From Haliotis rubra (Eukaryota), in contig NW_025765147.1 in the NCBI RefSeq assembly GCF_003918875.1, positions 186,001-248,687 on the forward strand: DNA of 62,687 nucleotides, given 5' to 3'. Shown here piece by piece: positions 527 to 62,687 of this stretch; the stretch's first letter is position 1; each line of letters starts with the position of its first letter. The translations under genes and the position numbers were made by a program. The notes beneath the pieces were generated by a model. The model had not been told where the DNA came from and made no database searches. It worked only from the letters and a program-made list of their open reading frames with translations.

Positions 527-790
527 CTAGTTTTTGAGAATCGACATGGTATTAATTCGGCATATCTTAAAATCTTTCTGTGAATATCGAGAAAGTCCTT
601 CCTTGATAGTATTAAGGATTATGGATAATCTTTGAGACAGGGATTTGGTGGTACATTTGCTGGAACCAGCAATATATCTCTCCTTGCAAAGAATTTTATG
701 TAGTTTTGGAATCAAGTACAAAAGAGGAGTGGACATGTCTTCAGGTTTAAGAGTCAAGTCAAACGTTGGTAACACCGTTGAGTGGTTTAG
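527..790 (-). mobile_element. Intronic reverse transcriptase fragment, Penelope-like
   Basis: Translation [11 protein letters not shown]...[16 protein letters not shown]; a shorter copy lies in the same intron of the PTP gene (~43688-43830). Confidence 0.5.
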
Positions 791-813
791 GCTAATACCT
801 ATATTTCTAGTAC

Positions 814-2458
814 CGTATATTTCCACCTCGCAGAAACTCAGATTCAGCATCCCTACTGTAGGTTGGCGATATATCAGAAGATGGAACCCCGTTAGGAGTA
901 CATCACACTCCAGGGTGTACTCTGGTTCCCACATGTAGGAAGAGTCCGGGGCGTGACATATTCTTCCATCTACCTTCACATATACGTCATCTTGTTGATC
1001 TGGAATATGTTGAGAAGAATGAACCATAATACCTTACTCTAAATACATATTCGGGTGTGTTTTAGCGTTGCTGTAACGTTATAGATGTCAAAGCTGGTCA
1101 ATTAATGTTTAAGATGTCTCATATAAAGTACTTGTCTGATACAAAGACCTTGTCAGTATTAGTACTATTTGTCAGTATTAGTACGCATTCGTTATCTTGT
1201 GTTTATGGTCACACAGTACCTTCCCAGAATATCTTGATCCTGGTAACTGTCCTGTTCTCTGTAAACTCCGCCTCCCATGCTGGTAATATGGACGAGACTG
1301 ATGCACACGGCCCTGACGTCACACCATCAGTAACCCATGATGCCTGCCCGGTGGTGGTGTAAGCATTGTTTTGCCCAAATGTAAAGTTACTTGCTGTTAT
1401 ATTCACTGTAATAATAAACAGTATCATTATCTGAGGTAAAGTGCATCACATTCCAATTCAGGTAGGAATTACTTTACGTACTGTATGTACAATCCAGAAA
1501 GTGTTCTTTCACTTGTTGTGTCATCTCGAGTTGCTTAAAACTTTAATATATGTTGTACCTAGTTGTCAGATTGCTAATTGCTTCTCGTGCTATATTCACT
1601 TTAACAATAAACATAGTCATTATCTGTGGGTAACCCATTTCAATATGGGGATTCAGGTAGCGATTACTGGAAGTATTGTCTGCAGTATCTAGCATATGTT
1701 GTTTCACTTCAGCTTGTCATCACGAGATGCTTCAAACTTTAAAATATATATATCTTGCATCAGCTTTGAGCATTAGTCGACTGTTATGTCTTCGTCTCCT
1801 TTAGATTTGATGATATTGTATTCTGCATCACATTGTTTATGCTGTGTTGAAAGACATCCTGCAAATGCCAACAGCAAACTCTGCTACTTACACTCTTGTG
1901 GGTAACAGGTAGTAAATGCCTAGACATAATGTGCGAATATAAACCCTAAAATAATAGCGACGCGATTCGAGTGAACATAAAGTCTTCTTGTGAATCATTC
2001 AAAAAACATATCCTGTTGATCGTTATAGACAAAACATTAAATCAATAGATAACTGAAACCAGGTGTAAATTGTAATCATGATCTGTCCTACCTGTAGCAC
2101 CTGTAATCAATACATTGAAATCAACGTTACCTAAGGTACAGTCCTGGGGACAGTTGGCGTCTTGGCTGGACACTGAAACACACACAGGCTTATGATGTGA
2201 ATTTTAGCTGATAAAGCAGTCAATAAAATGGTCATTCTCAGAAACTCTTTGTTTTCTAGGCACACGCCTGTGAACGCAATGCAATTGTTACAGTGTATGT
2301 TTATTGCGAACTGTTTATTGTGGTTTATGTAAAATACATGTATATGACCCCATTTACTAAGAATGTAGGTATTTCTTTGGCAAGTGTGTGTGTGTCTCAC
2401 CTTGCGGGCTCCATACAAACATCACAATCAAGTAAATAATGGCGTTGTTGGTCACCAT
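814..2458 (-). CDS. Receptor paralog F, 5' part: signal peptide + Cys mini-exon + fucolectin/F5-8C-like domain; continues off the left edge
   Basis: Exons 2458-2401, 2172-2131, 1393-1220, 999-814, all GT-AG and phase 1, join in frame: MVTNNAIIYLIVMFVWSPQVSSQDANCPQDCTLASNFTF...[11 protein letters not shown]...LSFCEVEIY; exon sizes equal those of the PTP gene. Confidence 0.8.
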
Positions 2459-5295: not shown

Positions 5296-7180
5296 TTATG
5301 TGCGGATATTTAGGGCATTTTCGTACAGACTCAAATCAGTAGTATTAACATACATGTTTGATTCTCCCGCTGCTTCACCGATGTCTTGATTATTAGAACC
5401 AACGTTGACATAGCATGATGTTCCAGTTGACACATTCTGATCATTAAAGTATTCGTTGTTCACATAGGTGTATTCGTTTTCATTAATGTTCTCATAGCTG
5501 GTAGAAACTGTCGTGTTAACATAAGTGGATGTCTGATTTGACCATCCCCTTGGTGTTCTGTGACTTTGTATGATCTGGGCCCTGTTCCTCAAAGCGATCG
5601 TAGCGCTAAGATGATCGTAACTCCCATACTTTAACATAGACTTACGACATTCGTAGCGCTACGATCGCTTTGAGGAACGGGGCCCTGGTATTGAGTGTGA
5701 TCAGAGGGTTCAGCTACACACAGTTCATAAGATGGCGTAACTGCTTCTCTAGCGTCCTTGGCTTGGGACCTTTTTCCTTTCTGTCTCCTGAAACATCGAA
5801 TTATGAATATGATCTTACAATGGTGCTCCCAAACAATATTAAAAGATCCGGTTCCGTTGAAAGGACCACACCGATGCTGATAGAAGAGAGGTACTCATGT
5901 CATTAATATTCTACATCTTGACAGAGGTGTTATTTAAATGTGTCGACGAAATGTTGCCTCTGCCCAAATGTGCAGTGGAAAAAAGTATAGTTTCGCCATG
6001 AATTATTCCAGTAAAAGCATGAGGACCGTTGTGTTCGGATGTTTTGACATTATCGTTGCCATTAACAGTTCCGGTGAAACGACCAAACCAAATTCCTCTG
6101 ATGGAACAGAGGTATTCATGTCATAAATATTCCACATCTTGACATAGGTGTTATTTATATGTGTCGACGAAGTCTCTGAGAAATGTTCCCCTGCCCAAAT
6201 ATGCAGCGAAATAAAGTATAGTACCATGAAGTATTCCAGTAAAAGCATCAGGTCCTTTTTGTCAGGATGTTTTGACATTATTGTTGTCAATAACAAAGGG
6301 GAGGAAATTTGAGATCAACCTATTACTGTTGTAAATTCGGGAACTTTAATCTTCCAGCGAAGCATTTTATGTATGCTATATTATCTTAACATACACATTT
6401 GTATCAGAAACATACTTCTTTTAGAGCTGTTGATAGCTGCACCATACCTCACACACACAACAGCAACAACCGCAACAGTGACGACACCAGCAACCACAGC
6501 ACCCGTGACAATGACGTATAGTAACGGGAACCTGCTATCGGGGGACTCTGAAAGTGTAGGATACATTCAAGCGAGGAAATAAAACACATTACACATTAAT
6601 ACATTGAACAGGTAATTTTTGTATGTGAAATAGACACTTTTATGCCGCATTAATATCCTTTTCAACAATGACATGCTTCTTTTGGATGAACATATTTCTT
6701 CTTATGTGAGTGCATGCGAGTATAATATATATATATTACATACGTGCCGGGTTTGCACGTGAGATAATACCCACAATACAATACAAACACAAAAGGTCAG
6801 CAATATAAATCGGCCTTGATCATCTGCAGTGATTAACAAGAGTGAAAGACTCGAAGTGACATAGTGCCAGTTATCATAGTGTTGGCCAAGTATACAATAT
6901 AAATGTATATTTAATTCATGGCATAAATATTCATCTCAAACTCCTGCTTTTGAAATGTCACGTGCAAAGATAAACTTTCTCTAATCCTGCTTGTTTCAAT
7001 AAATACAATATCATTGGGAGATTTAAAATGTTTATTAATTGCGCAATTACAATTGACAGTAACTACAACCTGCAAGAATTTCGCACTCTTTCATTGTCTT
7101 TAACTCGTCCGTTTTTGAAGAACCCCCAAAACCTATACATCACTTCCTTTACCTGCTGCACCAGATGGAGGCGTGGATGG
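5296..7180 (-). pseudogene. Receptor paralog E (YxN-tail type): mucin remnant, TM exon 6547-6448, tail exon 5787-5296
   Basis: TM exon intact (LLYVIVTGAVVAGVVTVAVVAVVCV); tail exon interrupted by a MITE with an in-frame stop; ectodomain exons absent (junction ~7185). Confidence 0.8.
5578..5684. mobile_element. PIF/Harbinger-like MITE
   Basis: ~31-bp TIRs (GGCCCYGTTCCTCAAAGCGATCGTAGCGCTA), CTG target-site duplication (5575-5577/5685-5687), empty site in paralogs at ~49210 and ~58750. Confidence 0.85.
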
Positions 7181-30278: not shown

Positions 30279-31047
30279 TAAAGACACATATATGAGATAA
30301 TCTCAAAGCATCTGTTACCGTTGAATCATTAAAGGTGAAAAGATATTGTTAACTTTCGAAGTCGTTGTCTCCAAGCACGGATGTGTTACATGTAATGAAT
30401 CATATTATAAACTAACCGTAAGAAGCCAACTTCAGTTTTAGGAGACTGCCTCTTAAGCGGTGACTGTATCAGTGAACAGTTCAGTATTAAAACAAGCTTC
30501 AGAAAACAAAGTTTACGTATACAACGTATTTTGTGAAACAAAATTGATAAAAAGTAGTAAAATGTTATTATGAAAATGTAAGAATATCTTGACCGCTATA
30601 CAACAACAACTACGTATCTGAAATACTGTGTTTGCATAACCATTGTGAAAATGTTTCAGAAATATATTTTGACATAAATATAATACCTTTATTATTCCCT
30701 GCACATGCTAAAACTATCTTACCATTCACATGGTCAATTTTCAGTCAAAGGTTTGGAAGTAGATTTCGAATGTACAGAATTTTGAACAAGGAAGGTATTT
30801 CCTGTATGACTGGGATGTTTCTAAAAGATGAAAGTTACATAACAGTGGACAAGCAATAGTAAACCGAAGGTTGGAACAACAAACAGTGTTTTATATAATT
30901 TAGATGGAAAACAATAATTTTAATGAATGTGGTATTACACCGCGTTTAGAAATATTCCAATATATCGGTGCGTGTGACCAATTCCTCTTCAATTCCACAT
31001 GTAACACTGAACACTGAATGAGCATATAAAGAGAATCGTGGTGTCCA

Positions 31048-40000: not shown

Positions 40001-43000
40001 AGTGACGTAAGTTATAGCATGTTTCTATTTTATTGAAAATATACAATCTTTTTACCTGTAAAATGGTATTTTGAATGATGAATAGCGGATCAACTTAAAA
40101 GACCTAGTTGGGACAAAACATAGTTATTTTCATATTTGTTAAAACGACCTATTTTAATGAAGTAATAAACAAATAAACTCCCGAAACAATTTTATTTCTA
40201 CTTCCGTGAGTACTTTACACCTCCACCCCCTGCTTGACTGTGTTGAATTCTCCATCATAAGGGATACATATTTCAATATCAAAACAGTAAAGGACCTTTT
40301 TAATAAAGTTAATTATCATTTAATCATTGATTTTTTAAAAGAGATAGATTTGTTACATGAATTTTGATATATGTTTTGTAAATAGAGAAAGTTATACAAT
40401 TGGTAGTTCAGATTATCAACTTAGATTGTTGGTGGCTGTATCCTCAAAGGGAGTTGAAGTAGCGTAAAATTATTGTCCTCCTGAGAGGGTACGTAAGTCC
40501 CCAAAATTGTCAAAGTCAATCTTGCTCAACCATACTTTTAATCGTAGTATATTTGTTTCCTTTAAAATTCGGCTAAACTTTTCCTACAATCGCCAGCGGC
40601 TGAAGAGATGGTGTAAGTCCAACTAAGGTCCATGCAGGTAGCAAAGGTACTGTAAGTCCCCGTGGACCCTAGTATGATCAACTACCTTCAGATGCTGGCG
40701 ATCTATAGCCCGTGTTTTAAATTGTACAGTCTTCTTCAATTAAAATGCTTTAGATTTACATTCTAGTTTTATATTCATATCTGTGATACTCTAGGATTTT
40801 TACTGTCCATCTTCGACAGGTTTAACTCTTCACAACATTTTTATATTGTATGCATTGTTTTTGTCACGATATGGCTGAAATATTGCCGATGTGACGTTAA
40901 ATATTAACTCACTTACTCACTCACACCTCCACCCGCAGGGGCGGATACAACTTTTTGGGAAAGGGGAGGGGGAAGGTGCACACTCTTGAGAAAAGGGAGG
41001 GTGCACACTTCATTTTCACCCGTTTTCACGGGTCATTTAATAAACTTTCAGGACAAAAGCAGGGGTGGCACATGCAACTTAAGAACTTCATGAATATGTA
41101 CACTATTTAATTAAGTTCCATGTTATAATTAAGTAACATTAACAAAGTGGAAGAAACACTAAGCGCCACGCTACTAATAAACAACATCCTCGTGCAGTCT
41201 TAGTAGACATGTCATGAGCAAATAGATTCTCCAAGACAGCATATTTTCATTGATGCAGATGTCAAATTTCAACTCATGAGATCATATATTTTGGATGCGA
41301 CATGTTGTGCCCGCCCAAATTATTCACTCAGTTTGCATTTTGCCTATCAGTATTTCATTTACCTGTATCCGCAACAGCAGGTTGTGTCGTTGGTTTTGTT
41401 TGCGACGTTGTTGAGGTCTCTGTTGGAACTGGTGCAGCGGTGCTTGTTTGGGATGATGTCGTGGGCTTGGTCGTTGTTATGGACGTGGTGGTGGTTGTTG
41501 ACTCTCCTGTATTGGACATAGTAGACATGGTAGAGGACGTTACTATCGGGTCAGCTAAAGAAAACCAGAAATGCATTTCCATATGTTGTATGAACCTTGA
41601 ATTGGACGTAAGGATATCTTAATACCACAAATGTATCTGAAATGAAACGTAATTGCATCAAAACAGAAACGAAACGCTTCGCCTTTGATTTAAACATCAG
41701 GGTACCGTTCCTCAAAGCAATCGTAGCGTTAAGGTGATCGTAACTCCTATGCTTTAACATAGACTTACGACACTCGTAGCGCTACGATCGCTTTGTGGAA
41801 CGGGCCCCAAGTCAGTTGAAGATGACAACCGCACAGAAGTTTGATGGATTTCCTCTTAAATATCTCCGAGAGCCATCGAAATGTGGTACAAGAACATTGT
41901 CTTGAATGTCAGTGATGTACCGTCGCCCATTCAGATTTTGTGTGAACGTGAAACGGTCAAGTTTACAGTCATATGAGGGGAAACACTACACCATAAAATG
42001 AATCCAAGGATTACTTGCTCCAAGATACTCCGTTGTGCAAGTTTAAAGTGTTTCTGCGGTGTTAGTCACGAGCTCGACCATCAGTCATGAACGACGAAAT
42101 CCACTTTCGTCTCACCAGTGGATCCTTCCCCCCTGACGTCAGTGGCATCGAGCTTACACCAAGTTAGTCGCACTGCTGTGAGCTCTGGGGATAACAACGT
42201 GCGTCTGATAGGTTGTCTGGCTCTATACCCTGCCGAAGTTAGGTAGTTTTGGACCAATCTGATGGACAAACGACGATGTGGAAGCCACTCTGATTTAACT
42301 ACGCCACTTGACAAAACGGGTAATGTCTTGGGATTCTGAGAATGCCTGTATCCTCCCTATGAGTTGTGACTCGCGGTCGTCGTGAAAGCTGACGGAACAT
42401 AACATCCTTAGTTTGCTGATGTTTTCTGGCCAGTCGGCTGATGACAACTTAACCATCATCTACTGACAAGCCCTGAACGACATGTTAGCATTCAGTATAC
42501 CAGTAACTTGCCATCTGTGAGAAGTTGTCTGTTAAGGAGGCCCTATATGTGTTTATCAACAATGGCATCAATTCATTTTCCAGGTGTAACAACAGTTTAC
42601 TGAAACTTGACATTTACTTAATGACAGGTGATGCGCGTAATGCTCGCCTTAGACTGGAACACGTGCATAACTAAATTAATGTATTGTACGCCCGATGAGT
42701 CAAAATACTCATTCAAACAAACATAATTATGATATGAATATAAATTGACATATGGGAGTTAAAAATCACAGGTGTTGCGGTACTTTTACCATGTGTATAG
42801 TTAAACGCGAACGATACGTTACGCCGTTACGCATACGGGTACTGATTTAGACATTAGTTCCGTTGAAGATACAAACGTGCATATGAAGGTGAAGGTATTT
42901 CGTGTAGTCACGGCATCGTAGGCCTGTGCTATGCTTTATATTATGAATTCTAATGGTATCGAAGAACGAAATGAGTAAAGTGAGCGAAGGAGTTACAACG

Positions 43001-45367
43001 TATAGTCACATTGACTTTATTTCAGCACCATCCTGACTAAACAAGTTATGAGTGATATATATTTTAATTATACAAACCTGTCGACAAAGGCCAGTATAAG
43101 TAACTAGAAAATCACAGAAACAGTATTGAAAATCTCTAAATATCTCTACAATTTAAGTTATATTTAGAACAATACAAATTACAAACGTTCTATGCATCGC
43201 CAGAAACTGAAGGTAAATCACCATACTAGGGACCATGGGGAAGTACAGTACTGACAGATTTACACGTTCCCTTAAGCCGTTGACACATAAATTGAAATCA
43301 AAACTATTCTACGTTATGAATGCTGATAGACTTATACGTAGGCTGAAAGAGGACCATAATTTTACAATGCTTCAAACTCTGTGTGGATACAGCCACTAAC
43401 AATATCAGGTATTAATATAAACTACAAACTATAAAGCATATACTTGTTTAAAAAACAGGTTTCAAATTTTATGAAACAATTCAATTTCTTATAACAATCC
43501 AATAATTAAATGAGAATTGACATTATGGAAAAGATCCTTCACTGTTTTTACAATGAAATATATATCCTTTGTGATTGAAAAATATGAACAAAATAATGTA
43601 TCGTCATTGACTAAACACATGTACATAAAACTTCTACCGTATATTTCCATAGATTCAGCATCATCGCACCTTCTGTAGGTTGGCGATTTGGTGGTACATT
43701 TGCTGGAATCAGCAATATATCTCTCCTTGTCAAGATTATTTTGTAGTTTTGGAATCAAGTACAAAAGAGGAATGGGCATGTCTTCAGGTGTAATAGTCAA
43801 GACAAACGCTGATAGCGCTGATGAAAGGTTTAGGCAAATACATATATTTCTAGTACCGTATATTTCCACCTCGCAGAAACTCAGATTCAGCATGCTAGCT
43901 GTAGGTTGGCGATATATCCGGAGATGGATCCCCGTCAGGGGTACATCACACTCCAGGGTGTACTCTGCTTCCCACATGTAGGAAGAGTTCGCGATGTGAC
44001 ATATTCTTCCATCTACAGACACATTTACGTCATCCTGTTGATCTGGAATATGTTGAGAAGAATGAACCAAATACCTTACACTAAATACAGATTCGGGTGT
44101 TTTTAGCATTGCTGTAACATAATAGCTGGTCAATTAATGTTTAAGATGTCTCATATAAAGTACTTGTCTGATATAAAGACCTTGTCAGTATTAGTACTAT
44201 TAATTTTGTCCGTATTAGTACGCAGCGGCGTAAAACTTTCGTTATTTTGTGTTTCTGATGACACAGTACCTTCCCAGAATATCTTGATCCTGGTAACTGT
44301 CCTGCTCTGTGTAAACTCCGCCTCCCATGCTGGGTATAAGGACGAGACTGATGCACACGGTCCTGACGTCACACCATCAGTAACCCAGGATGCCTGTCCA
44401 GTGATGGTGTAAGACTTGTTGTCCCCAGATGTAAAGTTACTCGCTGCTATATTATCTGTAATAATAAACAGTATCATTATCCGTGGTATGATAAGTTCAT
44501 CACATTCCAATATGGTGATTCAGGTTGGAATAACTGTACGTACTGCATGTAGAATCCAGAAAATGTTCTTTTACTTCGGCTTGTCATCACGAGTTGTTTA
44601 AAACGTTCCAGTATCTTGCATCAGCTTTCAGCATTAGTCTATTGTTATATCTTCATCTCAATCAGATTGGACACTATTGTATCGTTTTCTGCACTACATT
44701 CTTTATATTGTGTTGCTACTACTTACACTTAATTTAATTTAAAGTAAAAACCTAATGTGCTAACATAAACACTAAACTAATGGCAATGCGATTTAAATGT
44801 ACATGATGTCTTATTGTGCATCATTGACAAACATATTCCGTTCGCAGTTATGGGCAACATATTAAATAAATAGGTAACTGAAAAGCAGGTGTAAATTGTA
44901 ATCCTGACCTGCCTTACCTGTAACAGCCATAATCAAAACATCGATATCAACGTTACCTGCGGTACAGTTCTGGGTGCAGCTGGGGTCTTGGCCGGGCACT
45001 GTAACACACATAGGCTTTGGGTTAACATGTGAATATGGAATGATACATCAGTCCATAAAATGGTCATTCTTTGATTTCAAGGCACGTCGGTGAACGTACA
45101 GTGTATGTTTATTGTGCATTATTTGTTGTGGTTTATGCACATTTATGTTTCCGTTGACCAGAAACGTAGATATTTCCTCATTCTCATCAGATGTATGTTT
45201 GTCTATGTGTTATTAGAATTACTTGTTGTGGTTTATGATCATTTATGTTTCCTTTCACAAGGAACGTAGGTATTTCCTCGTTGGCATCAGATGTAAATGA
45301 GTGTCTCACCTTGCGAGATCCATACAGCCATCAAAATCAAGTAAACAATGGCGTTCTGGGTAATCAT
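31048..45367 (-). CDS. Receptor-type protein tyrosine phosphatase with fucolectin/F5-8C-like ectodomain, mucin stalk, TM and tandem PTP domains (paralog C), 859 aa
   Basis: 23 phase-compatible exons totalling 2580 nt: 45367-45310, 44998-44957, 44443-44270, 44042-43857, 41554-41363, 39263-39191 (TM), 38961-38915, 38565-38339, 37618-37525 (KNRY), 36961-36894 (DYINAS), 36503-36467, 35987-35890, 35678-35550, 35214-35060 (WPDHG, VHC), 34224-34089 ([12 protein letters not shown]), 33827-33702, 33532-33460, 33188-33151, 33001-32885, 32528-32382, 32261-32107, 31729-31594, 31119-31048. Confidence 0.88.
36550..36765 (-). mobile_element. SINE-like family 2, degraded
   Basis: CAGACAATCCAGTGATCAACAGCATG...GACATGTGTCAACCAAGTCAGCGAG. 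Confidence 0.65.
37073..37219 (-). mobile_element. SINE family 1
   Basis: Body and head match the 238 copy. Confidence 0.7.
37735..38029 (+). mobile_element. 5'-truncated I/Nimb LINE (3' UTR only)
   Basis: Matches ~23460-23767; flanked by TSD TCCACTG(C/G)AAATT. Confidence 0.8.
40229..40922 (+). mobile_element. 5'-truncated I/Nimb LINE
   Basis: Matches ~23070-23767; TSD ACACCTCCACCC (40217-40228 / 40923-40934). Confidence 0.85.
41701..41807. mobile_element. Harbinger-like MITE, second copy
   Basis: Same sequence family as 5578-5684; flanked by CAG/CAA. Confidence 0.8.
41830..42800 (-). mobile_element. Degraded Tc1-like transposon
   Basis: Transposase-like residue ([31 protein letters not shown]) and TACAC...AAAAGTACCGCAACAC-type terminus. 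Confidence 0.6.
43075..43620 (-). mobile_element. Degraded I/Nimb LINE 3' end
   Basis: [30 protein letters not shown] plus 3' UTR motifs on the minus strand. Confidence 0.75.
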
Positions 45368-45955
45368 GATTCCACACTTGCTGATTGAGACATGAAATTA
45401 ATTCATCCCTTGAGGCCACACAAGTACATCCATTAAGAAGCAACTAGTTCAGAAATGAAACTACAACCACACCCGTGACAGTTATTCAAGCATGCAATGA
45501 GGTACTCCAACCAGCTCACTTCCTCACAGCCTTTTGCGCATTTGGCTCGACACATTGCCGGTAGATATTCATATATGCGTTGATATATTCACGGAAATAT
45601 ATTCACAGAGATAGGACACATTCAATAAAACGAGCATGGTGTGAACAGTCATCGAAAACTGCGTCCCATGTCCTAGAGTACACAATGAGAAATGTTCAGT
45701 GAAAAGGCCTGCTTCAATGTTCTTACTAAGAGGACATGTAGTGGATTAAAGGATCATATGCAGTGTATTGGAAAACGCCAGTGCGTCAAGATTGTGATCA
45801 TTTTCCTCCTGATAAGCAATATGTGACCAGACTGTTCTCATCACGTGTACCTGTGATAAAATATCAGAGTTATCACTGTAAAATTGCACAAACTAAAAAC
45901 GCCATATATGCAGGTTACAATGGTTGCAAAGCTGCATCCACTTCCTCCTTATCAA

Positions 45956-48930: not shown

Positions 48931-51900
48931 TCAAGTGCAGATATTTAAGGTATTTTCGTACAGACTAAAGTGATTAGTACTAACATACATGTTTGATTCT
49001 CCCACTGCTTCCCCGATGTCTTGATTAATAGAACCAACGTTGACATAACATGACGTGCCAGTTGACACATTCTGATCATTAACGTATTCGTTATTGACAT
49101 ATGTGTATTCGTTTTCCCTTGTGTTCTCACAACTGGTAGAAGCTGTCGTGTTAACATAATGGATCCTTGATCTGACCATCCCCTTGGTGTTCCGTGGCTT
49201 TGTATGCTCTGGTACTGAGTATGATCGAAGGGTTCCGCTACACACAGTTCATAAGATGGCATGACTGCTTCTTCAGCGTCCCTGGCTTGGGGCCTTTGTC
49301 CTTTCTGCCTCCTGAAACATCGAATTATGAATAATGATATTACAATGGTGCTTCCTAACAATATTCAAAATTTAGAAAAAGTGATAATTGAACTGGGTCA
49401 AGAGAGTGATATAGCGAGAGTGAATCGGATTGTGAAAGTAACTGACATTGTAAAGTTAGTATATCAAGCTAGATAGCATAAATCAAGCTTGACTGTAAAA
49501 ACAATTCAAGTAAAACATGAAATTATGTTTTTTGTCAAAAGAGTTGTTGTCAGGGACAAGTGCTGTAACCAATCCATGTATGCATGCTTCGCACGAACGG
49601 AACATTAATAACATTCTCTGCTCCCCTATTTAATGGAGATAGTCCGACCTGCCGTTTGTGTCATTTGACATCCTTGGTAATGCATATGTAGAGTAGCTCA
49701 GGTCAAGCTGAACAAGCTGTACTCATGTCATTAATATTCTACATATTGACAGAGGTGTTATTTACATTCGTAGACGAAATGTTCCCACTGCACAAATGTG
49801 CAGTGGAATCCAGTACAGTTTCACCATGAATTATTCCAGTAAAAGCATGAGGACCTAAGTGTTTTGACATTATCGTTGACATTAACAGTTCCGGTGAAAC
49901 AACCAAACCAAATTCCTCTGATAGAAGAGAGGTACCTACGTCATTATTATTATACATCTTGACAGAGGTGTTATTTATATGTGTCGACGGAGTCTCAGAG
50001 AAATGATCCCTCTGCCCAAATGTGCAGTGTAATAATGCAGTAGTTTTGCCATGAATTATTCCAGTAAAAGCAAGAGGACCTTTGTGTCAGGATGTTTTGA
50101 CATTATTGTTGTCAATAACAAAGGAATTTGAGATCAGCCTATTGTTACGGTATATTCGTCCTCGTTAATCTTCCAGCGAAGCTTTAAATTGTGCTCTATC
50201 ATCATAACCTATAGAACATTTGTTTCACGCACATAATACTTTACCATCTCTTGATAGCTGTACCATACCTCATATACACAGCAGCAACAACCGCAACAGC
50301 GACGACACCAGCAACCACAACACCCACGACAATGACGTACAGTAGCGGGAACCTGCTATCGGGGGGACCCTGAAAATGTAGCGATGCATTCAAGCGAGGA
50401 AATCAAACACATTACACATTATCAGTTTGAACAGTTAATTTTTTTATGTGAAATGCACATTTATAAGCGGTATTGATATCCTTTTCAACAATGCCTTGCG
50501 TCTTTTGCATGAAAATATTTTTTCAGGCAAAACACAAAAGACGTTTTCACCGGTCACCATGCAATGTATGTGATTGATTACGGCGCCTTCAGAATTGAAA
50601 GAGGTATTTTACGCCTGGTGAGAAATATCTCTGACTACATACACTAAAAAGACTTCCCCTTTGCACTAACTCTCATAATCCTTACATATGACCTGCTTGA
50701 TTCTTAATCATATAACCTCATAGTAAATGTAATGAGTAATGATGAGGGGTATTTTCTTCTTATATGTGTGCATGCGAGTGTATTATATACATATATTACA
50801 TGCGTACCCACAATGCATTACAAACACAAAAGGTCAGCGACATAAATCGATCTTGATTATCAGCAATGAAAGACTCGAGGTTATCACTGTGTTGGCCGAG
50901 TATACAATTCAACTGTCTATCATTCATGGCATTAATATACACTTCAAAATTCTGCTGTTGAAATGTCACGTGCAACGATAACCTATATCCAAGTCTGTTT
51001 GTTTGAATAAATGCAATATCAATGTGAGAGTTAAACTGTTTATTAATTGCGCTTACCTCCGAGGTAAGCACGACGTTAAACCCAATTTCACCTCACCTCA
51101 CCCCCGAGGTGACAATAACTACAACCTGCAAGAAGTTTGCACTCTGTCATTGTCTTTAACCCGTTCGTCTTTGACGGACCCTCAAAACATATATATCACT
51201 TCCTTTACCTGCACCGGATGGAAGCGTGGATGTTTCCGATGGGTGTGCTGCCGCAGTCCGTGGTGTGACCATTGTGTTTGATGTTTCTGCCGTAGGTGAT
51301 ACAACCGCCGATGTCATCGGTGTTGGAATGGATGTTAAGGACGTTGTACTCTTATCCATGCTGACCCAGAACTCTGTAATTATTGTCGAGGATGCTATTG
51401 GTGAAGTAGTCACTTTTCTCGTAAACAATGTCGTGGATGTTGTTGGCATAGTAGTAGTTGTGGAAGAAGACACCGAAGAAGACGTTACCACCGAATCAGC
51501 TAAAGAAACACATACATGTCTTTCTTAATTTCAATGTAGCTTGAATGGAAGGTATATGATACAATGTATCTGATTTGGTAGCGGACTGATTTGGCATTTG
51601 ACAATTCAACATATGTCATATTTTGGATTATACTTTCTTAGTAAAGTACAGATTCTAGTACTGGTGGTCTGGACCACGGACGTTGTGGAAGCCTTGGTGC
51701 CTAAGCAGGCTAGGCGTCTGACTTTGTGTGCTGCTGATTAGGTGCCTGACGCTGAGTCTGTGGGTTCGAATCCCATGTGTGATGATAAGCATGCGGGTAA
51801 CACTAAATTCGTAAGTTGAAAATAAAATATATTGTACAATCAAGTGATATACGTAAAATATACCAGATTTTAGAGAATATTTTACTTTATTCGTGATCTG

Positions 51901-54900
51901 GCAACAAAAGAAAATATCATTTCAAAAATAAAATTCATTGATTTGAATTGACATCTTAGCACAAATTATTTTAATCATCATCATGATAAAAAGATTCATA
52001 ACACATAGTACACATCCAGTCTTCACTGTAGTTTCATTAAGAATGAACTGCGTCTGCCTACACTTATTCTGCCAGTAGACAAATCATCATATATTTATGT
52101 TATATGTTGTATTTATTATCTCAGCAGATATTTATACCTTTATATTATTGTTGACACGTTCGTGGTTACGTATGCCAGGATGTTTGGTGACTATATCATC
52201 GACAGTGGAGACGGTTAAGTCTCTACAACATCCCGAGGATGCAGCATTTCTCTAAAGTGTATCCATCGATACATATCTTCCACCTCGTGAAGTCGGAATG
52301 AAATTTTACTCTAACTGCTGGTTTGCCATAATGAAAGTGATGAATTAGAAAGTATGGCCAGCATATTATGTACCCAAATTGAGTTGGTGCTTACTCATAT
52401 CAATTAATCTCAATCAATCGTTGTCAAAACAAACGAAGTGAGTTCAAATTCATTGATTTTAATTGTGTAAGTGTGTAAGGGGTAAGTTCATGTCACCTAA
52501 TTCGTTAGGTAGTTCAGAAATGTGTATAACCCAGAGACTTAATCGCTTAAAACAACATGCACAGTCAGTCCCCCAACATCAAAGGATTTTCACTGTAATT
52601 ACAAATGTATACCAGGTAAGACATCACTGAATACACCTACATTCTGTCGTGTAAACACAGCGACCTTCCTTCAAGGATTAACGACAATATTTCATTTTTT
52701 AGAAGAATTGTGGACACCATGTAAAAAATTGTCAGGTGTGTTATCTTTGGTGTCCAATGAAACAAGGTCACGTGACATGGAACAGGCTTTTGGCAGCTGC
52801 AGATCAATGGTATATTGTTCAGTTATGTGGATACTGATGGATACATTTCTCAAACAAGGTACATGTAATAGCCCAATAGTTTGCTATAACGTTAGTTGGT
52901 TTGATATCTGTATTTTGTCTTTTTGTAACTGAAACCCAATGCAAAGTTTCGTAAATCAGGATAACTGAAACCTAATGAAGCCTTACCGGTTTCTCAGTAA
53001 TTTATCAATTTAAATTATCTGTAATTAAGTTTACCAAACGAAACGTAAAGGAGACAAAGTAGAATCTTAAGTTTCCATATTCTTTCAATTAGGTTTAAGT
53101 TTTCCTGAAATTAATTTTATGTGACCATATCTTTTATTTGAATTCTGGTGTACAGAAACATTGAAATCACTAAACTGAAACCTATATACATGTAGTATAT
53201 GGGCAGTTTAACAGGTTTCTGGATATATGCTGTATATACTGGTATATATGGAGTCAAATTAATTTCCTCTACGTTCGTTTCATTCAAGTTCTCATCAATG
53301 ATGGTTTCCAGTTGCGTTACGCAATGGAAATTACCAATGATACTTTCTGGAAACTAACTTTGTTGGTATCCGGCAGTTTCCCAGTCGCTGAAGCTAACCT
53401 TGTTGGTTTCCGGCAGGTTCAGGTCGCTGAAACTAACCTTGTTAGCCGGAAACCAACAATCATAGTTTCCGTGAGCGGAAACCTACGTGATTCTGACATT
53501 ACCAAGTTTCATGTAGGTTTCCGGAAAAATGGAACCTTGTACCTTGTTATTTTTGCTGTGATAGGACTCAACCCAACAAAAGTACTAGAATCTGTACTTT
53601 ACTAAGACAGTGAAATCTCAAATACAATATACGTTACATTTGACGACTTTCTAATCTCATTTTGTATTCATAGTCGGCAATTTACACATGAAAGTTCAAG
53701 TGTTCCTTTGTTCTTTTCCAGGTTTCTTCTCAAGGTTGCACTGTGGATGAAAATAAGGAAATAAATAACGGAACATTTGTACTTTCATGTGTTCCCTTAT
53801 TTGTTTCCATGAGTATATTTAACCAGACCGTAAGCATTGCGCTGATTCAGTTATACGTTTTGTGAAGATATACAACCGCTCAAACAGTCCATGAATGATC
53901 TCATATATCTTCAGTAATGTTCAACGGTCAATTTGTGAAACGTCCCGTCAGAGCCAGCGTCCTGGTGGTGTTAGTGAACTTCCCTCGAATCACTGTCGGT
54001 ACAGTAGATGTATTTGCTATCTGAATTTAAATATCTAATAACAAACTAGTTTTCCATATTAGATTTTAGTTGGTGCCGTTTTCGCCATAAGATATGTAGC
54101 CGTTTTTGCCAAGTCGAGGTTCCATTATGTCTAAATGGTGCCAAACAAATAATCCCAATGATTGGGCAAAATTATGTATCATTATTGACTGAATACATAT
54201 ATCTTCTACCGTATACTTCCACCTCGCAGAAACCCAGATTTAGCATTCTCGCATCTTCTGTAGGTTGTCGATGTATCAGGAGATGGTCCCCCCGTCACGG
54301 GTACATCACACTCCAGGGTGTACTGTGGTCCCCATCTGTAGGAAGAGTTTTGCGGGGTGTGACAGATTCTATCACCTACAGACACATATACGTCATCCTG
54401 TTGATCTGGAATATGTTTTGAGAAGAAAAAACAAAATACCTCACACTGAATTACTGGTAACATAAAAGATTTCAAAGCTGGTCAAATAATATTTAAGATG
54501 TCTCATATAAAGTACTTGCCTCATATAAAGTACTTGCCTCATATAAAGATACTCATATATCAGTATTAATACTATTTGTCAGTATTAGTACGCATTCGTT
54601 ATTTTGTGTTTCTGATGATACAGAACTTTTGCAGAATATCTTGATCCTGCTAACTGTCCTGTTCTGTGTAAACTCCGCCTCCCATGCTGGGAATATGGGC
54701 GAGACTGATGCACACTGCCCTCACGTCACACCATCAGTAACCCAGGATGCCAGCCCCCGTGATAGTGTAAGTACTGTTTACTCGCTGCTATATTAACTGT
54801 AATAATAAACAGTATCATTATCTGTTGTACGTTAAGTTCATCACATTCCAATATGGGGATTCGAGTTACTGTCTGTAGAATCCAGAGAATGTTCTTTCTC

Positions 54901-58474: not shown

Positions 58475-60321
58475 TTAAGTGAGGATATTTGGGGTATTTT
58501 TGTACAGACTAAAATCATTAGTATTAACATACATGTTTGATTCTCCCGCTTCACCGCTGTCTTGATTATTAGAACCAACGTTGACATAGCATGATGTTCC
58601 TGTTGACACATTCTGATCATTAACGTATTCGTTGTTGACATAGGTGCATTCGTTTTCATAAATGTTCGCAAGACTGGTAGTTGTTGTCGTGTTAACATAA
58701 ATGGATCCTTGATCTGACCATCCTCTAGGTGTTCTGTGGCTTTGTATGTTCTGGTACCGAGTATGATCGATGGGTTCCGCTATGCACTCTTCATAAGATG
58801 GCACAGCTGCTTCTTCAGCGTTCTTGTCTTGGGGCCTTTTCCCTTTCCGTCTCCTGAAACATCGAATAATGAATATGACTTTATAATGGTGCTTCCAAAC
58901 AATATTTGAAAATCCGGTTCAGGTGAAACGACCAAACAAACCAAATTCCTCTGATAGAACAGAGGTACTTATGTCATTGTTTCCTCTGCCCAAATGTGCA
59001 GTGAAAGTATAGTTATTTCCAGTTAAGGAGGACTTTTGCGTCAGGATGTTTTGACGTTATCATTGTCAAGGGGAGCAAATTTGAACAGAATTTTGAGGTC
59101 AGCCTATCCCCGTTAATATTTCAGCGAAGCCTTTTAGTATGCTCTGTTATCATAACTTATACAACATTTATATCAAGAGCATAATAGTTTACGAACTGTT
59201 GATAATTGCACCATACCTCACACACACAATAGCAACAACTGCAACAGTGACGACACCAGCAACCACCACACCCACGACAATTACGTACAGTAACGGGAAC
59301 CTGTTATCAGGGGACTCTGGAAATGTAGACATACATTCAAGCGAGGAAATCGAACCCATTAGATATTAACACATAGAACATTTAAATGTTTATATGTGAA
59401 ACAGACATGTGCATACCGCATTGATATCCTTTTCAACAATGACATGCTTCTTTTAGCTAGAACACAAACAACTTTTGCACCCGTTACCATACAGCATTAT
59501 GTGATTGAATACTACTCCTGCAGAATCGAAAGAGGTATTTTACGCCTGTTGAGAAATATATCTGACTTTATATACTAAAATGACTTCCCCTTTGCAATAG
59601 CACCTTACATATAACTTGCTTGACTCTTAATCATATAACCTCAAAGTATATATAATTAGTAAATGGTGAAAAGTGTTTTCTTCTAATGTGTGTACCTGCG
59701 AGTATGATATACATATTATAATTACAGGCGTGATGTACTACCCACAATGTAATACAAACACAAAAAGTACCCGATATAAATCGGTCTTGATCATCTGCAG
59801 TGATTAATAATAGTGAAAGACTCGAAGGGACATATTATCATAGTTTTGGCCGAGTATACAATATAACTGTTTTGTTTTTTTCTTTAATGACATGTAAACA
59901 TGTACTTACAAATTCTGCTGTTGAAATGTCACGTGTAACAATAATCCTTCTCCAAGTCTGTTTCAATACAAGCAGTATCAATGTGAGATTTAAACTGGTT
60001 ATTGACTGCGCGTACCTCTGCTGTGACAAGAACTACAACCTGCAAGAATTTAACCCGTTCGTCGTTGAAGAACCCCCCAAACATATACATCACTTCCTTT
60101 ACCTTCACCAGATGGAGGCGTGGATGTTTCCGATTGGTTTGCTGTCGCTGTTGTTGGTGTTGCCATTGTGTTGGATGTTTGTGCAGTAGTGGACATAGTG
60201 ACCAAGAACGCTGTACCTATTGGTGAAGTAGTCACGTTTGTCGTAGACAATGTCTTGGATGTTGTTGGCATGGTAGTAGTTGTGGAAGAAGACATTGAAG
60301 AAGACGTTTCCAGCGGTACAG
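58475..60321 (-). CDS. Receptor paralog A, 3' part: mucin stalk, TM, YxN-rich tail; 5' exons off the right edge
   Basis: Exons 60321-60103, 59316-59217, 58853-58475 join in frame; tail has 9 Tyr, 8 of them YxN. Confidence 0.82.
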
Positions 60322-60570: not shown

Positions 60571-62333
60571 GCTTGGGATTTAGAAAGGGATATTCTACCA
60601 CTGATCATATATTTACTCTGTATGCACTAGTCAAAATCGCTATCAAAAAGAAACATAAGGTTGTACATAGCATTTGTAGATTTTAAAAGGCATTCGACTC
60701 AGTCAATCGTTTTAAATTATGGCAGTGTTTACGCAAGCACTTGGGTTTACGAGGGAAAATGGTTAGCATTCTCAAATCCAATGTATTCTAACGTTCGATC
60801 TTGTGTGCGTTGTAAAAGACAGGGTTACAAGATTTTCGATTGCCCACTTGGTTTAAAGACAGAGGTTGCTGCTTAAGTCCACTCCTATTTTCCTTCTTCA
60901 TTAGTGAATTATATCCACGATATCAATTTTAGCTGGAAAACATGGAACTAAATGTACCCAGATCTTGTAGGAAGTCCTAATGCTCCTTTTTGCTGACGAC
61001 GTTATTTTTAGTTTCGGATACTGTGAAGTCGGTTTACAAAATCAATTAAATATCTTAGAAGTTATACCTTTAAAGAATGGAAGTTAACAGTAAAATTTAA
61101 GCAAAACAGAAATTGTGATATTTAGGAGGAGGGCGGTCCCGTGGCCAGGAAACGAACGCTGGTTTTTGATGGTCAGTTGATGAATGTATCGATCAATATT
61201 CTTACTTAGGGTTTTGTTTTCAAACAGAATGAACTTGAATAAATGTGCACATAACTTAACTTTACGTGGAAAAAGGCTTTGATACAAGTTTTATCGGTTT
61301 TAACCTACAAAGTTGGAACTATGTCACCCAATGTGTTTTTAAGATATTTAATTCTCAGATTCAACCCATTTTATTATATGGATCTGAAATATGGGGTTTT
61401 CAGCGTTTCCTTTGATTGTATTGAGAGAGTGCATCTTTTAGCCTGTAAAAGTACCTCCAATGTAAGCTCAAAGACACCTAACTGCATGGTATATGGCGAA
61501 TGGCAGATTTCCTTTTGTATATCAATTCTCACATAAGATGTTTAAAATAATTGGTTTAAGGTTCTAAATATGCACGAACAACGTCTCGCCAAAATTAGCT
61601 TTACAATATGCTTTTAAATCTGGATAATTTGGGAAAACACACTTGGGTAACTGATATCAGAAATTTATTATTTTCTTCACGGTTTCGGTTTCCACCATGG
61701 TTAGAGCCAAACAATTGGCGATGTGAACTTTGGTTTATTAATGAATTTCAAGTGTTAGATCAATAGATATATTTCAATCAAGAATGGAAATCCACCCTAG
61801 ATTCAAGCTCACGATAATATAGATAATTCACAGGACCTTTAAAACGTTACTCAGCCAGAAAATACTTATCAATAATTCACAACTTATATAGTTTTAAGAA
61901 CAATGTTCGTAAGAAAGTATCGTTTAGGTTTATTTATCTTCAATGATTAATGAGATTGTTGAAAAACCTCTGTATCCAGAAAGAACATCGATATTGTCCT
62001 TTTATGTAACGTTGGAATAGAAAATGGAAATTCATTTTACCCTGATATATCCTTGTTATCACAGAATTAAGACGAAATATATACCGCACCATCGTTTCTT
62101 TAAAAGCAGCCCCATTATGCATATATATCTTTATTTACAAACCAATAATAAAGAAATATTCTTGCTCAATTGTCCTTATACTTAAAATGCGCATTAGCTA
62201 AAAAGAATCTTATAAAGCCGAATTGTATACCCATTAAATATAACATATAAATATCCAGAATATTCCTTTATCCTGTAACTCTCTCATGTATATGGGCCAG
62301 GAGGCCTCATACAATAAACATCTTTTGACTGAC
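60571..62333 (+). mobile_element. Degraded 5'-truncated non-LTR retrotransposon (RTE-X/CR1-like)
   Basis: GFRKGYSTTDHIFTL, YIAFVDFK, LSPLLF, LLFADDV; AATAAA and TGAC tail; TSD TTTGACCAG (60562-60570 / 62334-62342); site empty in paralog B (~53910). Confidence 0.75.
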
Positions 62334-62687
62334 TTTGACCAGAACACACATTTCTATAACGTCCCATCAAAGGAAAGCCTGCGTCCCTGGTGAGGTGTTA
62401 GTGGAACGTCTCGTGTATTCAGACTAGAGTACACCCAAGTCAGGGAGTCTACATTTTACTTGTATCTGGTTTGTTCACAGGCGCATGGAGTACAACTGCT
62501 GCTGACCAGTGTAAGCTTGCTAACAAAATAGTTTACAAGTTTGTGAGGTGACAGGTGCTACTTTCCGGTGGGAACAGGACATGATTATCCTTTTAAGCGC
62601 CCGCATCTTATATAATTTTAACAGATATTTTGTAACTTTCTGTTTTCCGGAATTTTGTTTCTGAAAGAAATGATCAAAACTGGGACA

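What the first reader, a model, noticed from the sequence alone, without database searches (positions are those of the whole stretch)
58475..58853. Cytoplasmic tail with 8 of 9 tyrosines in YxN motifs
The tail of A has YQN, YVN, YEN, YVN, YVN, YVN, YVN, YKN within about 90 aa. Most are retained in B and E. This density resembles multivalent adaptors such as LAT, which cluster Grb2/SOS, but here it is fused to a ligand-binding ectodomain. No canonical ITAM is evident.
Basis: partly seen in the sequence, partly recalled or inferred. Interest (0 to 1): 0.8.

Follow-up and report, generated by a model that had tools for sequence, protein, structure and literature searches.

The report
Abalone receptor tail packed with YxN
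The stretch is the last exon of an uncharacterised blacklip abalone membrane-protein gene, and its inner tail carries eight Tyr-x-Asn sites, five kept in three abalone species, so it probably docks a Grb2-type adaptor, though nothing shows that yet.

Summary
Window 58475-58853 (minus strand) is exactly the last coding exon of Haliotis rubra LOC124266039 (XP_046556803.1, "uncharacterized protein"). Its tail has 9 tyrosines, 8 of them in YxN and five of those as YVN. None of 200,000 shuffles reached 8.

Relatives of the tail were found only in abalones. Complete proteins in H. rufescens and H. cracherodii join a signal peptide, a weak F-type-lectin-like domain, a mucin stalk, one membrane span and this tail, with 7 YxN each. 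Five YxN sites are invariant across the three species.

- Gene A's own ectodomain is not in the window, because the contig ends inside its upstream intron.
- Copies B and E are broken: a 1-bp deletion in B, a 110-bp MITE in E.
- Most copies in the H. rubra array carry lesions.

The tail has no sequence relation to LAT and no conserved palmitoylation motif, so the resemblance is functional only. My best reading is a non-catalytic receptor tail that docks Grb2/Drk when phosphorylated (confidence 0.55); LAT-like clustering is speculative. No RNA run was listed.

A phosphatase receptor gene with the same ectodomain sits next to the YxN gene in all three species. The scan has noted other tyrosine-tail lectin-like receptor clusters elsewhere in this genome, but not this family.

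The parts
58475..58853 (-). Last coding exon of gene A (H. rubra LOC124266039): cytoplasmic tail of about 126 aa with 9 Tyr, 8 in YxN. Stop codon at 58475-58477.
   Evidence: Translation. 99-100% match to XP_046556803.1. Exon borders with AG acceptor and full CDS reconstruction.
59217..59316 (-). Transmembrane exon of gene A: a hydrophobic span followed by VCV, then the RRRKGKR stop-transfer that starts in the next exon.
   Evidence: GT-AG borders. Paralogous exons at 6423-6557 and 50253-50375.
60103..60321 (-). Thr/Ser-rich mucin-like stalk exon of gene A. NCBI's CDS starts at the internal Met at 60295. The exon has an intact phase-1 acceptor, like the paralogs in which it is spliced to the second lectin exon.
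   Evidence: Splice pattern EIY|AVPLE seen in P0013.
60571..62333 (.). 1.76-kb insertion in the intron upstream of the stalk exon, absent from paralogs F, G and H. Intron homology to H resumes at 62334-62684 and runs to the contig end, so A's lectin exons would lie about 1 kb beyond the window.
   Evidence: blastn of the A region against L003. Window end equals the end of contig QXJH01001229.1.
48931..49319 (-). Paralog B tail exon: 5 of A's 8 YxN sites kept, but a 1-bp deletion between 49160 and 49159 shifts the frame before the first YVN.
54202..54851 (-). Paralog B lectin-like exons, with an in-frame stop in the first and a frameshift in the second.
5296..5795 (-). Paralog E tail exon, split by a 110-bp MITE-like insertion at 5573-5682. 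Six of A's YxN positions kept, plus one shifted.
629..1439 (-). Lectin-like exons of paralog F. Its tail lies outside the window and has a deletion and a stop.
43492..44510 (-). Lectin-like exons of the neighbouring receptor tyrosine phosphatase gene C (same ectodomain type). PTP motifs KNRY and WPD...VHC lie at 37433-37657 and 35011-35229.
   Evidence: (P0009). Conserved neighbourhood in H. rufescens and H. cracherodii.

Best explanation
The exon encodes the cytoplasmic tail of a single-pass membrane protein family found only in abalones.

Architecture. Complete members have a signal peptide, one small F-type-lectin-like beta-sandwich, a Thr-rich mucin stalk, one membrane span and a tail with no enzymatic domain. 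This part is shown here.

Mechanism. This part is inferred.
- The protein works as a non-catalytic, tyrosine-phosphorylated receptor.
- When the ectodomain is engaged or clustered, a cytoplasmic Src-type kinase phosphorylates the tail. The conserved membrane-proximal SYEEC may be its entry site.
- That brings Sos or a Gab/Dos scaffold to the membrane and turns on Ras-MAPK or PI3K.
- With five or more usable sites per chain, Grb2-Sos cross-linking of tails as on LAT is possible, but this is the least supported step.
- The adjacent phosphatase receptor with the same ectodomain is a candidate antagonist.
For: - Motif count and chance test.
- The exon is part of an NCBI gene model with correct splice sites.
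- Type I topology: signal peptide in P0002, and an RRRKGKR/RRTKRRR cluster after the membrane span.
- Relatives only in Haliotis among 1.84 billion representatives. Complete proteins P0002 and P0006 each carry 7 YxN.
- YVNT, TYVN, CYVN, MYVNT and LY[KE]NT are invariant in four tails from three species that are otherwise about 50% identical.
- Tyr is invariant at 7 of 9 positions against 33 of 111 other columns in six tails. Fisher p = 0.02 for Tyr and Asn(+2) together.
- A YEN site has moved by 4 residues and an extra YENV was gained in the American species, while the total stays at 7-8.
- The motif copies share only motif-sized DNA repeats, so the density is not a recent internal duplication.
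- pYxNx is the ligand of the SH2 domain of Grb2 (LAT Y171/Y191/Y226, PMC3291652) and of Drosophila Drk (Sevenless Y2546, PMC11203457).
- Grb2, Sos and Ras are reported as expressed genes in a bivalve mollusc (PMC13198591).
- No ITAM, YxxM, NPxY or PxxP is present in A.
Against: - There is no evidence of expression, phosphorylation or binding. No RNA run was listed.
- Gene A is incomplete in the assembly.
- All other H. rubra copies examined carry a lesion somewhere: B, E, F, G, H and I.
- Codon tests give no clear purifying selection. A versus H shows 7 non-synonymous and 0 synonymous changes. H. rufescens versus H. cracherodii gives omega about 1.2 on 16 changes. A/B/E pairs give 0.3-0.6.
- Asn(+2) is invariant at only 3 of 8 sites once degenerate copies are included.
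- Y74 and Y79 are 5 residues apart, so they can hardly be occupied together.
- I could not check the abalone Grb2 orthologue or its specificity-setting residues.
Confidence: 0.55

Rival explanations
1. Copy A is one unit of a decaying birth-and-death array and is itself non-functional. On this view its motifs are inherited from a working ancestor and mean nothing for A today, whatever the family does in other species.
For: Six other tail-bearing copies on the same contig all show lesions:
- B: 1-bp deletion, plus a stop and a frameshift in the lectin exons.
- E: MITE insertion.
- F: deletion and a stop.
- G: stop in a lectin exon.
- H: 13 gap columns in the stalk exon.
- I: stop in a lectin exon.

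A's 5' part is unseen. A versus H shows 7 non-synonymous and 0 synonymous changes. NCBI could only build partial or chimeric models here.
Against: All three visible exons of A are open, with intact splice sites. A has the highest YxN count of any copy. Against H, the tail exon differs at 1.9% while the introns differ at 4.7-7.4%, though gene conversion could explain that. Some lesions may be assembly errors, for example a 1-bp change in a T run.
Confidence: 0.3
2. The tyrosines act mainly through partners other than Grb2. Candidates are an SHP2/Csw-type phosphatase or SAP-like adaptor at ITIM/ITSM-like sites, or AP-2 at YxxPhi endocytic signals. The tail would then be inhibitory or a sorting signal rather than a Ras-activating platform.
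For: SCYVNV fits the ITIM pattern, TRYQNI fits the ITSM pattern, and YQNI and YVNV fit YxxPhi. H. rufescens has YENI-x6-YVNI, which fits a loose ITAM pattern.
Against: These fits are not conserved. The American species have SCYVNT, KYSDL replaces TRYQNI, and the ITAM-like pair is lost in H. cracherodii. The feature that is conserved is Asn at +2, which these partners do not need. Six of A's eight sites have a polar residue at +3.
Confidence: 0.12
3. The NCBI model is correct as it stands. A would then be a headless transmembrane adaptor (70-aa mucin stub, membrane span, tail) that works like LAT, NTAL or SIT beneath some other receptor.
For: XP_046556803.1 has no signal peptide or lectin domain. 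No lectin exon lies in the 2.4 kb upstream.
Against: The stalk exon keeps the phase-1 acceptor used to join the lectin exon in paralogs. The upstream intron is homologous to that of paralog H right up to the contig end, and H's lectin exons lie about 1 kb further on. Complete orthologues have the head.
Confidence: 0.1
4. The motif density is a by-product of Asn-rich composition or of chance.
For: The tail has 17 Asn in 128 residues.
Against: None of 200,000 composition-preserving shuffles reached 8, and the maximum was 7 even within the Asn-rich distal part. Five sites are invariant across three species.
Confidence: 0.01

Closest known systems
LAT / NTAL (LAB) / LAX transmembrane adaptors of vertebrate lymphocytes
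   Same: A membrane-anchored tail with no enzymatic domain and several YxNx sites. LAT has three, LAB's three distal tyrosines all bind Grb2, and LAX has five of ten tyrosines in Grb2 motifs (PMC3291652). YVNV is the very sequence of LAT Y171 and Y191 (my knowledge). Valence of 3 or more allows Grb2-Sos cross-linking.
   Different: There is no sequence similarity and no CxxC palmitoylation motif. The lone Cys is Ser in two species. There is no PLC-gamma-type site. Complete members carry about 200 residues of ectodomain with a lectin-fold head. The YxN count is higher, at 7-8.
Non-catalytic tyrosine-phosphorylated receptors (immunoreceptors) with a direct Grb2 site, such as CD28 YMNM or the membrane IgG/IgE tail tyrosine
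   Same: A type I receptor with a small ectodomain, no kinase domain, and tail tyrosines that need a Src-family kinase (PMC11399299 for the class). The receptor docks Grb2 directly rather than through a separate adaptor (my knowledge).
   Different: Those receptors have one YxN. This tail has 7-8, and its head is a lectin fold rather than an Ig domain. The family is confined to abalones.
Sevenless / EGFR-type receptor tyrosine kinase tails that bind Drk/Grb2
   Same: pYxNx docking of the SH3-SH2-SH3 adaptor, shown in an invertebrate for Sevenless Y2546 (PMC11203457).
   Different: There is no kinase domain here, so phosphorylation must come from a separate kinase.
F-type lectins (eel agglutinin 1k12, striped bass FBP32 3cqo) and CBM32 modules
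   Same: These are the best structural matches of the ectodomain model. There is a weak profile match to FBP32, with the shared C-terminal LCEVE[IV]YG strand.
   Different: The model is of low confidence (pLDDT 58). Pfam scores are below threshold. The His of the fucose-binding motif is not kept in the profile alignment. No ligand is known.

Membership tests
LAT/NTAL/LAX transmembrane adaptor family | Detectable sequence homology (Pfam LAT, LAT2 or LAX families) | tested here: not met
   No Pfam family at E up to 1 for the tail and none of these families for P0002, P0006 or P0013. The exhaustive HMMER search found only Haliotis relatives.
LAT/NTAL/LAX transmembrane adaptor family | Very short ectodomain with no ligand-binding domain | tested here: not met
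   The complete relative P0002 has a signal peptide, a lectin-like domain and a mucin stalk. For A itself the 5' end is off the contig.
LAT/NTAL/LAX transmembrane adaptor family | Juxtamembrane CxxC palmitoylation motif | tested here: not met
   H. rubra copies have a single Cys (VCVRRRK). H. rufescens and H. cracherodii have Ser at that position.
LAT/NTAL/LAX transmembrane adaptor family | Three or more YxN sites in the tail | tested here: met
   8 in A and 7 in H, P0002 and P0006. Five are invariant.
Grb2/Drk SH2 ligands (pYxNx) | Tyr with Asn at +2 on the cytoplasmic side | tested here: met
   Topology follows from the signal peptide and the positive cluster after the membrane span.
Grb2/Drk SH2 ligands (pYxNx) | Tyrosine is phosphorylated and binds the SH2 domain | not testable with these tools
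   This needs phosphoproteomics or binding assays.
Non-catalytic tyrosine-phosphorylated receptors | Single-pass receptor, no catalytic domain, conserved tail tyrosines | tested here: met
   Architecture of P0002 and P0006. Tyr is invariant at 7 of 9 positions.
ITAM-bearing receptors | Yxx[LI]-x6-12-Yxx[LI] | tested here: not met
   Absent from A, G, H, I and H. cracherodii. There is one non-conserved fit in H. rufescens.
F-type lectin domain | Galactose-binding-like beta-sandwich fold | tested here: inconclusive
   The top Foldseek matches are 1k12 and 3cqo at E about 1e-4 with TM 0.45-0.49, but the model has mean pLDDT 58. Pfam F5_F8_type_C_2 scores only E 0.02-0.15.
F-type lectin domain | Fucose-binding His/Arg/Arg motif | tested here: not met
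   In the profile alignment to FBP32, the lectin's C-T-H-T is matched by C-A-S-V. The alignment is weak, at E 0.17.

The most novel reading that the evidence does not exclude
The locus is a conserved two-part signalling switch. One lectin-like ectodomain is wired in neighbouring genes either to a 7-8-valent Grb2-docking tail or to a tandem tyrosine phosphatase. A single ligand would then gather both a phosphotyrosine platform and its eraser. The YxN tail would itself condense with Grb2-Sos, merging receptor and LAT-type scaffold in one chain. That would be an invertebrate solution unrelated by descent to vertebrate paired receptors.
Probability: 0.15. Interest if true: 0.75.

Novelty: new variant of a known kind. 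Interest (0 to 1): 0.45.

Why it matters
If the tail does recruit Grb2/Drk, it would show that a multivalent YxN scaffold arose independently in a mollusc. In vertebrates that role belongs to separate adaptors such as LAT. Here it would be built directly into a lectin-fold surface receptor.

The gene also sits beside a phosphatase receptor with the same head, in three species. That gives a simple, testable system for how invertebrate cells without antigen receptors turn surface recognition into Ras signalling.

It would also give a first functional handle on one of the many abalone-only receptor arrays. Until expression and binding are shown, it remains a well-conserved motif pattern in an uncharacterised gene.

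Tried and rejected
- RNA evidence: the look-up of sequencing runs listed no run.
- Pfam on the tail, stalk and whole relatives gave nothing above threshold.
- A literature search for the LOC and XP identifiers gave no paper. A search for YxN, Grb2 and mollusc together gave nothing relevant.
- I suspected the phosphatase gene's juxtamembrane segment shared ancestry with the YxN tail. BLASTP found no similarity, so I rejected this.
- I considered internal duplication as the source of the motif density. Only motif-sized repeats of 13-16 nt were found, so I rejected this.
- I considered inverted topology, with the NxT sequons of YVNTT glycosylated outside the cell. The signal peptide and the positive-inside cluster rule this out.
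- Codon-based selection tests were uninformative because there were few changes and signs of mosaic history. Tail dS was 0.036 against lectin-exon dS of 0.13-0.31 between H. rufescens and H. cracherodii.
- The contrast 'intact copies keep YxN, broken ones lose it' is not clean. E keeps 7 and H is itself damaged.
- Full-length AlphaFold gave mean pLDDT 34. It shows no fold in the tail but is too poor to count as evidence of disorder.
- I could not look up the abalone Grb2 orthologue.
- The window has no N runs and nothing in it was taken for human.

Full report
**What is at the coordinates**

Window 58475-58853 on the minus strand translates without stops into a tail. It begins with a basic cluster (RRRKGKR) and ends at a stop codon at 58475-58477.
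- A word search found a 223-aa NCBI protein that is 99-100% identical: XP_046556803.1, 'uncharacterized protein LOC124266039' of Haliotis rubra, the blacklip abalone.
- Rebuilding that model on the window gives three coding exons with GT-AG borders:
  - a Thr/Ser-rich stalk exon, 60321-60103 (NCBI's Met is at 60295);
  - a transmembrane exon, 59316-59217;
  - the tail exon, 58853-58475.
- The window contains no N runs.

**The observation**

The tail has 9 tyrosines.
- Eight are followed by Asn at +2: YQNI, YVNT, YENE, YVNN, YVND, YVNV, YVNT and YKNT.
- The ninth is a membrane-proximal SYEEC.
- Shuffling the residues 200,000 times never gave more than 6 YxN. Shuffling only the Asn-rich distal 95 residues gave at most 7. 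Five YVN never occurred.
- At the DNA level the only internal repeats are the 13-16 nt around the motif codons themselves, so the density is not left over from a recent internal duplication.
- Pattern searches find no ITAM, YxxM, NPxY or PxxP in A. There is one ITIM-like fit (SCYVNV) and one ITSM-like fit (TRYQNI), and neither is conserved in the other species.

**Paralogs in the window**

tblastn finds two more tail exons, and both are damaged.
- B, at 48931-49319, has a 1-bp deletion between 49160 and 49159, just before the first YVN. Its lectin-like exons at 54202-54851 carry a stop and a frameshift.
- E, at 5296-5795, is split by a 110-bp element with inverted ends at 5573-5682. A second copy of that element lies at 41707-41804.
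- Read across the lesions, B keeps 5 of A's 8 sites. E keeps 6, plus a YEN displaced by four residues.

**Is A fused to an ectodomain?**

This cannot be seen here.
- No lectin-like exon lies between the stalk exon and the window end.
- The window end is the end of contig QXJH01001229.1.
- The stalk exon keeps the phase-1 acceptor that, in paralogs, joins it to the second lectin exon.
- The contig continues below the window start, and I fetched that part as locus L003. It holds further copies F, G, H and I.
- A is 93.6% identical over 2.3 kb to copy H. After a 1.76-kb insertion private to A (60571-62333), the homology with H's intron resumes and runs to the last bases of the contig.
- In H the lectin exons lie about 1 kb further upstream.
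- A's 5' end is therefore most likely cut off by the assembly, not by biology.
- Every other copy on the contig shows some lesion:
  - F has a deletion and a stop in the tail.
  - G and I have stops in a lectin exon.
  - H has 13 gap columns in the stalk exon.
- NCBI's 245-aa model P0013 spans 40 kb and mixes exons of different copies.
- The H. rubra array looks like a birth-and-death cluster. Whether any copy, A included, is intact is open.

**Relatives elsewhere**

- An exhaustive HMMER search with the tail against 1.84 billion representatives found only two animal proteins: A itself and a 379-aa protein of H. rufescens, XP_046340997.2. The other hits were long bacterial proteins matched through short low-complexity stretches.
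- Word searches added a 384-aa H. cracherodii protein.
- The H. rufescens protein is complete. It has a signal peptide, a domain of about 130 aa, a mucin stalk, a membrane span and a tail with 7 YxN.
- In an alignment of four tails from three species, which are about 50% identical between the Australian and American species, five sites are invariant: YVNT, TYVN, CYVN, MYVNT and LY[KE]NT. The SYE.C block is also invariant.
- Over six tails, Tyr is invariant at 7 of 9 positions against 33 of 111 other columns. Fisher p = 0.02 for Tyr and Asn(+2) together.
- Sites also turn over. A YEN has shifted by four residues and the American species have an extra YENV, yet the count stays at 7-8 in A, H, H. 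rufescens and H. cracherodii.
- Codon tests add little:
  - A versus H shows 7 non-synonymous and 0 synonymous changes.
  - H. rufescens versus H. cracherodii gives omega about 1.2 on 16 changes.
  - A/B/E pairs give 0.3-0.6.
- Between H. rufescens and H. cracherodii, tail dS (0.036) is far below that of the lectin exons (0.13-0.31). This points to a mosaic history or gene conversion.

**The ectodomain**

- Pfam gives only sub-threshold hits to F5_F8_type_C_2.
- An AlphaFold model from eight abalone sequences is a beta-sandwich of modest confidence: mean pLDDT 58, and 70-83 over the core.
- Its best PDB matches are the eel and striped-bass F-type lectins and bacterial CBM32 modules, at E about 1e-4 and TM 0.45-0.49.
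- A profile search of PDB sequences gives FBP32 at E 0.17. In that alignment the lectin's C-T-H-T, which holds the fucose-binding His, is matched by C-A-S-V.
- The head is therefore lectin-like in fold but lacks the canonical sugar site. 'Ligand-binding' is an assumption.

**Neighbourhood**

- In the window, genes A and B are followed on the same strand by gene C. C starts with the same lectin-like exons (43492-44510) and carries PTP motifs, KNRY and WPD...VHC, at 35-37.7 kb.
- In H. rufescens and H. cracherodii the single YxN gene is likewise followed, about 5 kb downstream on the same strand, by a gene with Y_phosphatase domains. That gene's first exons are 68-83% identical to the YxN gene's lectin exons.
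- Only the head is shared. The phosphatase gene's membrane-proximal part shows no similarity to the YxN protein.

**How it most likely works**

Shown:
- a type I membrane protein family with a conserved, enzyme-free tail rich in YxN.

Established knowledge:
- pYxNx is the ligand of the Grb2 SH2 domain (LAT Y171, Y191 and Y226; PMC3291652).
- The same holds for Drosophila Drk (Sevenless Y2546; PMC11203457).
- Grb2, Sos and Ras are reported as expressed genes in a bivalve mollusc (PMC13198591).
- Receptors without kinase domains need Src-family kinases (PMC11399299).

Inferred:
- Ligand-driven clustering leads to phosphorylation of the tail by a cytoplasmic kinase.
- The abalone Grb2/Drk orthologue then docks at up to 5-8 sites.
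- That recruits Sos or a Gab/Dos scaffold.
- Cross-linking into LAT-like assemblies needs a valence of three or more (PMC3291652). This is possible here but untested.
- Y74 and Y79 are too close together to be used at the same time.

**Comparison with known systems**

- It works like LAT, NTAL or LAX but is not a member of that family. There is no homology and no CxxC motif, the lone Cys is not conserved, and complete members have a sizeable ectodomain.
- It is best filed as a new, abalone-restricted family within the broad class of non-catalytic tyrosine-phosphorylated receptors. What is unusual is its 7-8 Grb2-type sites and a neighbouring phosphatase receptor with the same head.
- The gene is already annotated as 'uncharacterized' and no paper mentions it.

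**Limits**

- No RNA run was listed, so expression and splicing rest on NCBI's models.
- I could not inspect the abalone Grb2 orthologue.
- The full-length AlphaFold model was too poor to use.

Noticed in passing
window 5573-5682 and 41707-41804: A roughly 110-bp element with terminal inverted repeats (MITE-like) is inserted in the tail exon of copy E. A 93% identical copy lies inside the phosphatase gene region.
   Followed up: partly
window 60571-62333: A 1.76-kb insertion is private to gene A's upstream intron and absent from paralogs F, G and H. It has no other copy in the window and its nature was not determined.
   Followed up: partly
L003 10001-50818 (contig below the window start): NCBI model 'mucin-5AC-like isoform X1' (245 aa) spans 40 kb. 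It joins the end of F's lectin exon to stalk and membrane exons of another copy and to H's tail exon, so it is a chimeric gene model across paralogs.
   Followed up: partly
window 31000-45400; L002 22175-27381; L004 19141-24573: A receptor tyrosine phosphatase gene with the same lectin-like first exons lies directly downstream of the YxN gene, on the same strand, in H. rubra, H. rufescens and H. cracherodii. H. rufescens also has a second F5/8-type-C phosphatase receptor upstream on the other strand.
   Followed up: partly
L002 tail exon 16977-17378 (H. rufescens): YENI-x6-YVNI fits a loose ITAM pattern in H. rufescens only. H. cracherodii has YVNN at the second site and H. rubra has no fit.
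   Followed up: yes
P0007 (H. cracherodii 'mucin-3B-like', 365 aa): A paralog with the same lectin-like head but an unrelated tail carries LYANEGI, the same core as the Sevenless pY2546 Drk-binding site quoted in PMC11203457. It also carries VYANG, so YxN docking may recur in other tails of this ectodomain family.
   Followed up: no
L002 versus L004: Between H. rufescens and H. cracherodii the tail exon is far less diverged (dS 0.036) than the two lectin exons (dS 0.13 and 0.31; omega 1.3 and 0.7). This suggests exon-wise gene conversion, non-orthologous heads, or fast-evolving heads.
   Followed up: partly
window 14050-23184: Two non-LTR retrotransposon copies lie between copies E and C on the plus strand. 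Their ORFs look like gag-type, endonuclease, reverse transcriptase and RNase H reading frames by eye, and no domain search was run.
   Followed up: no
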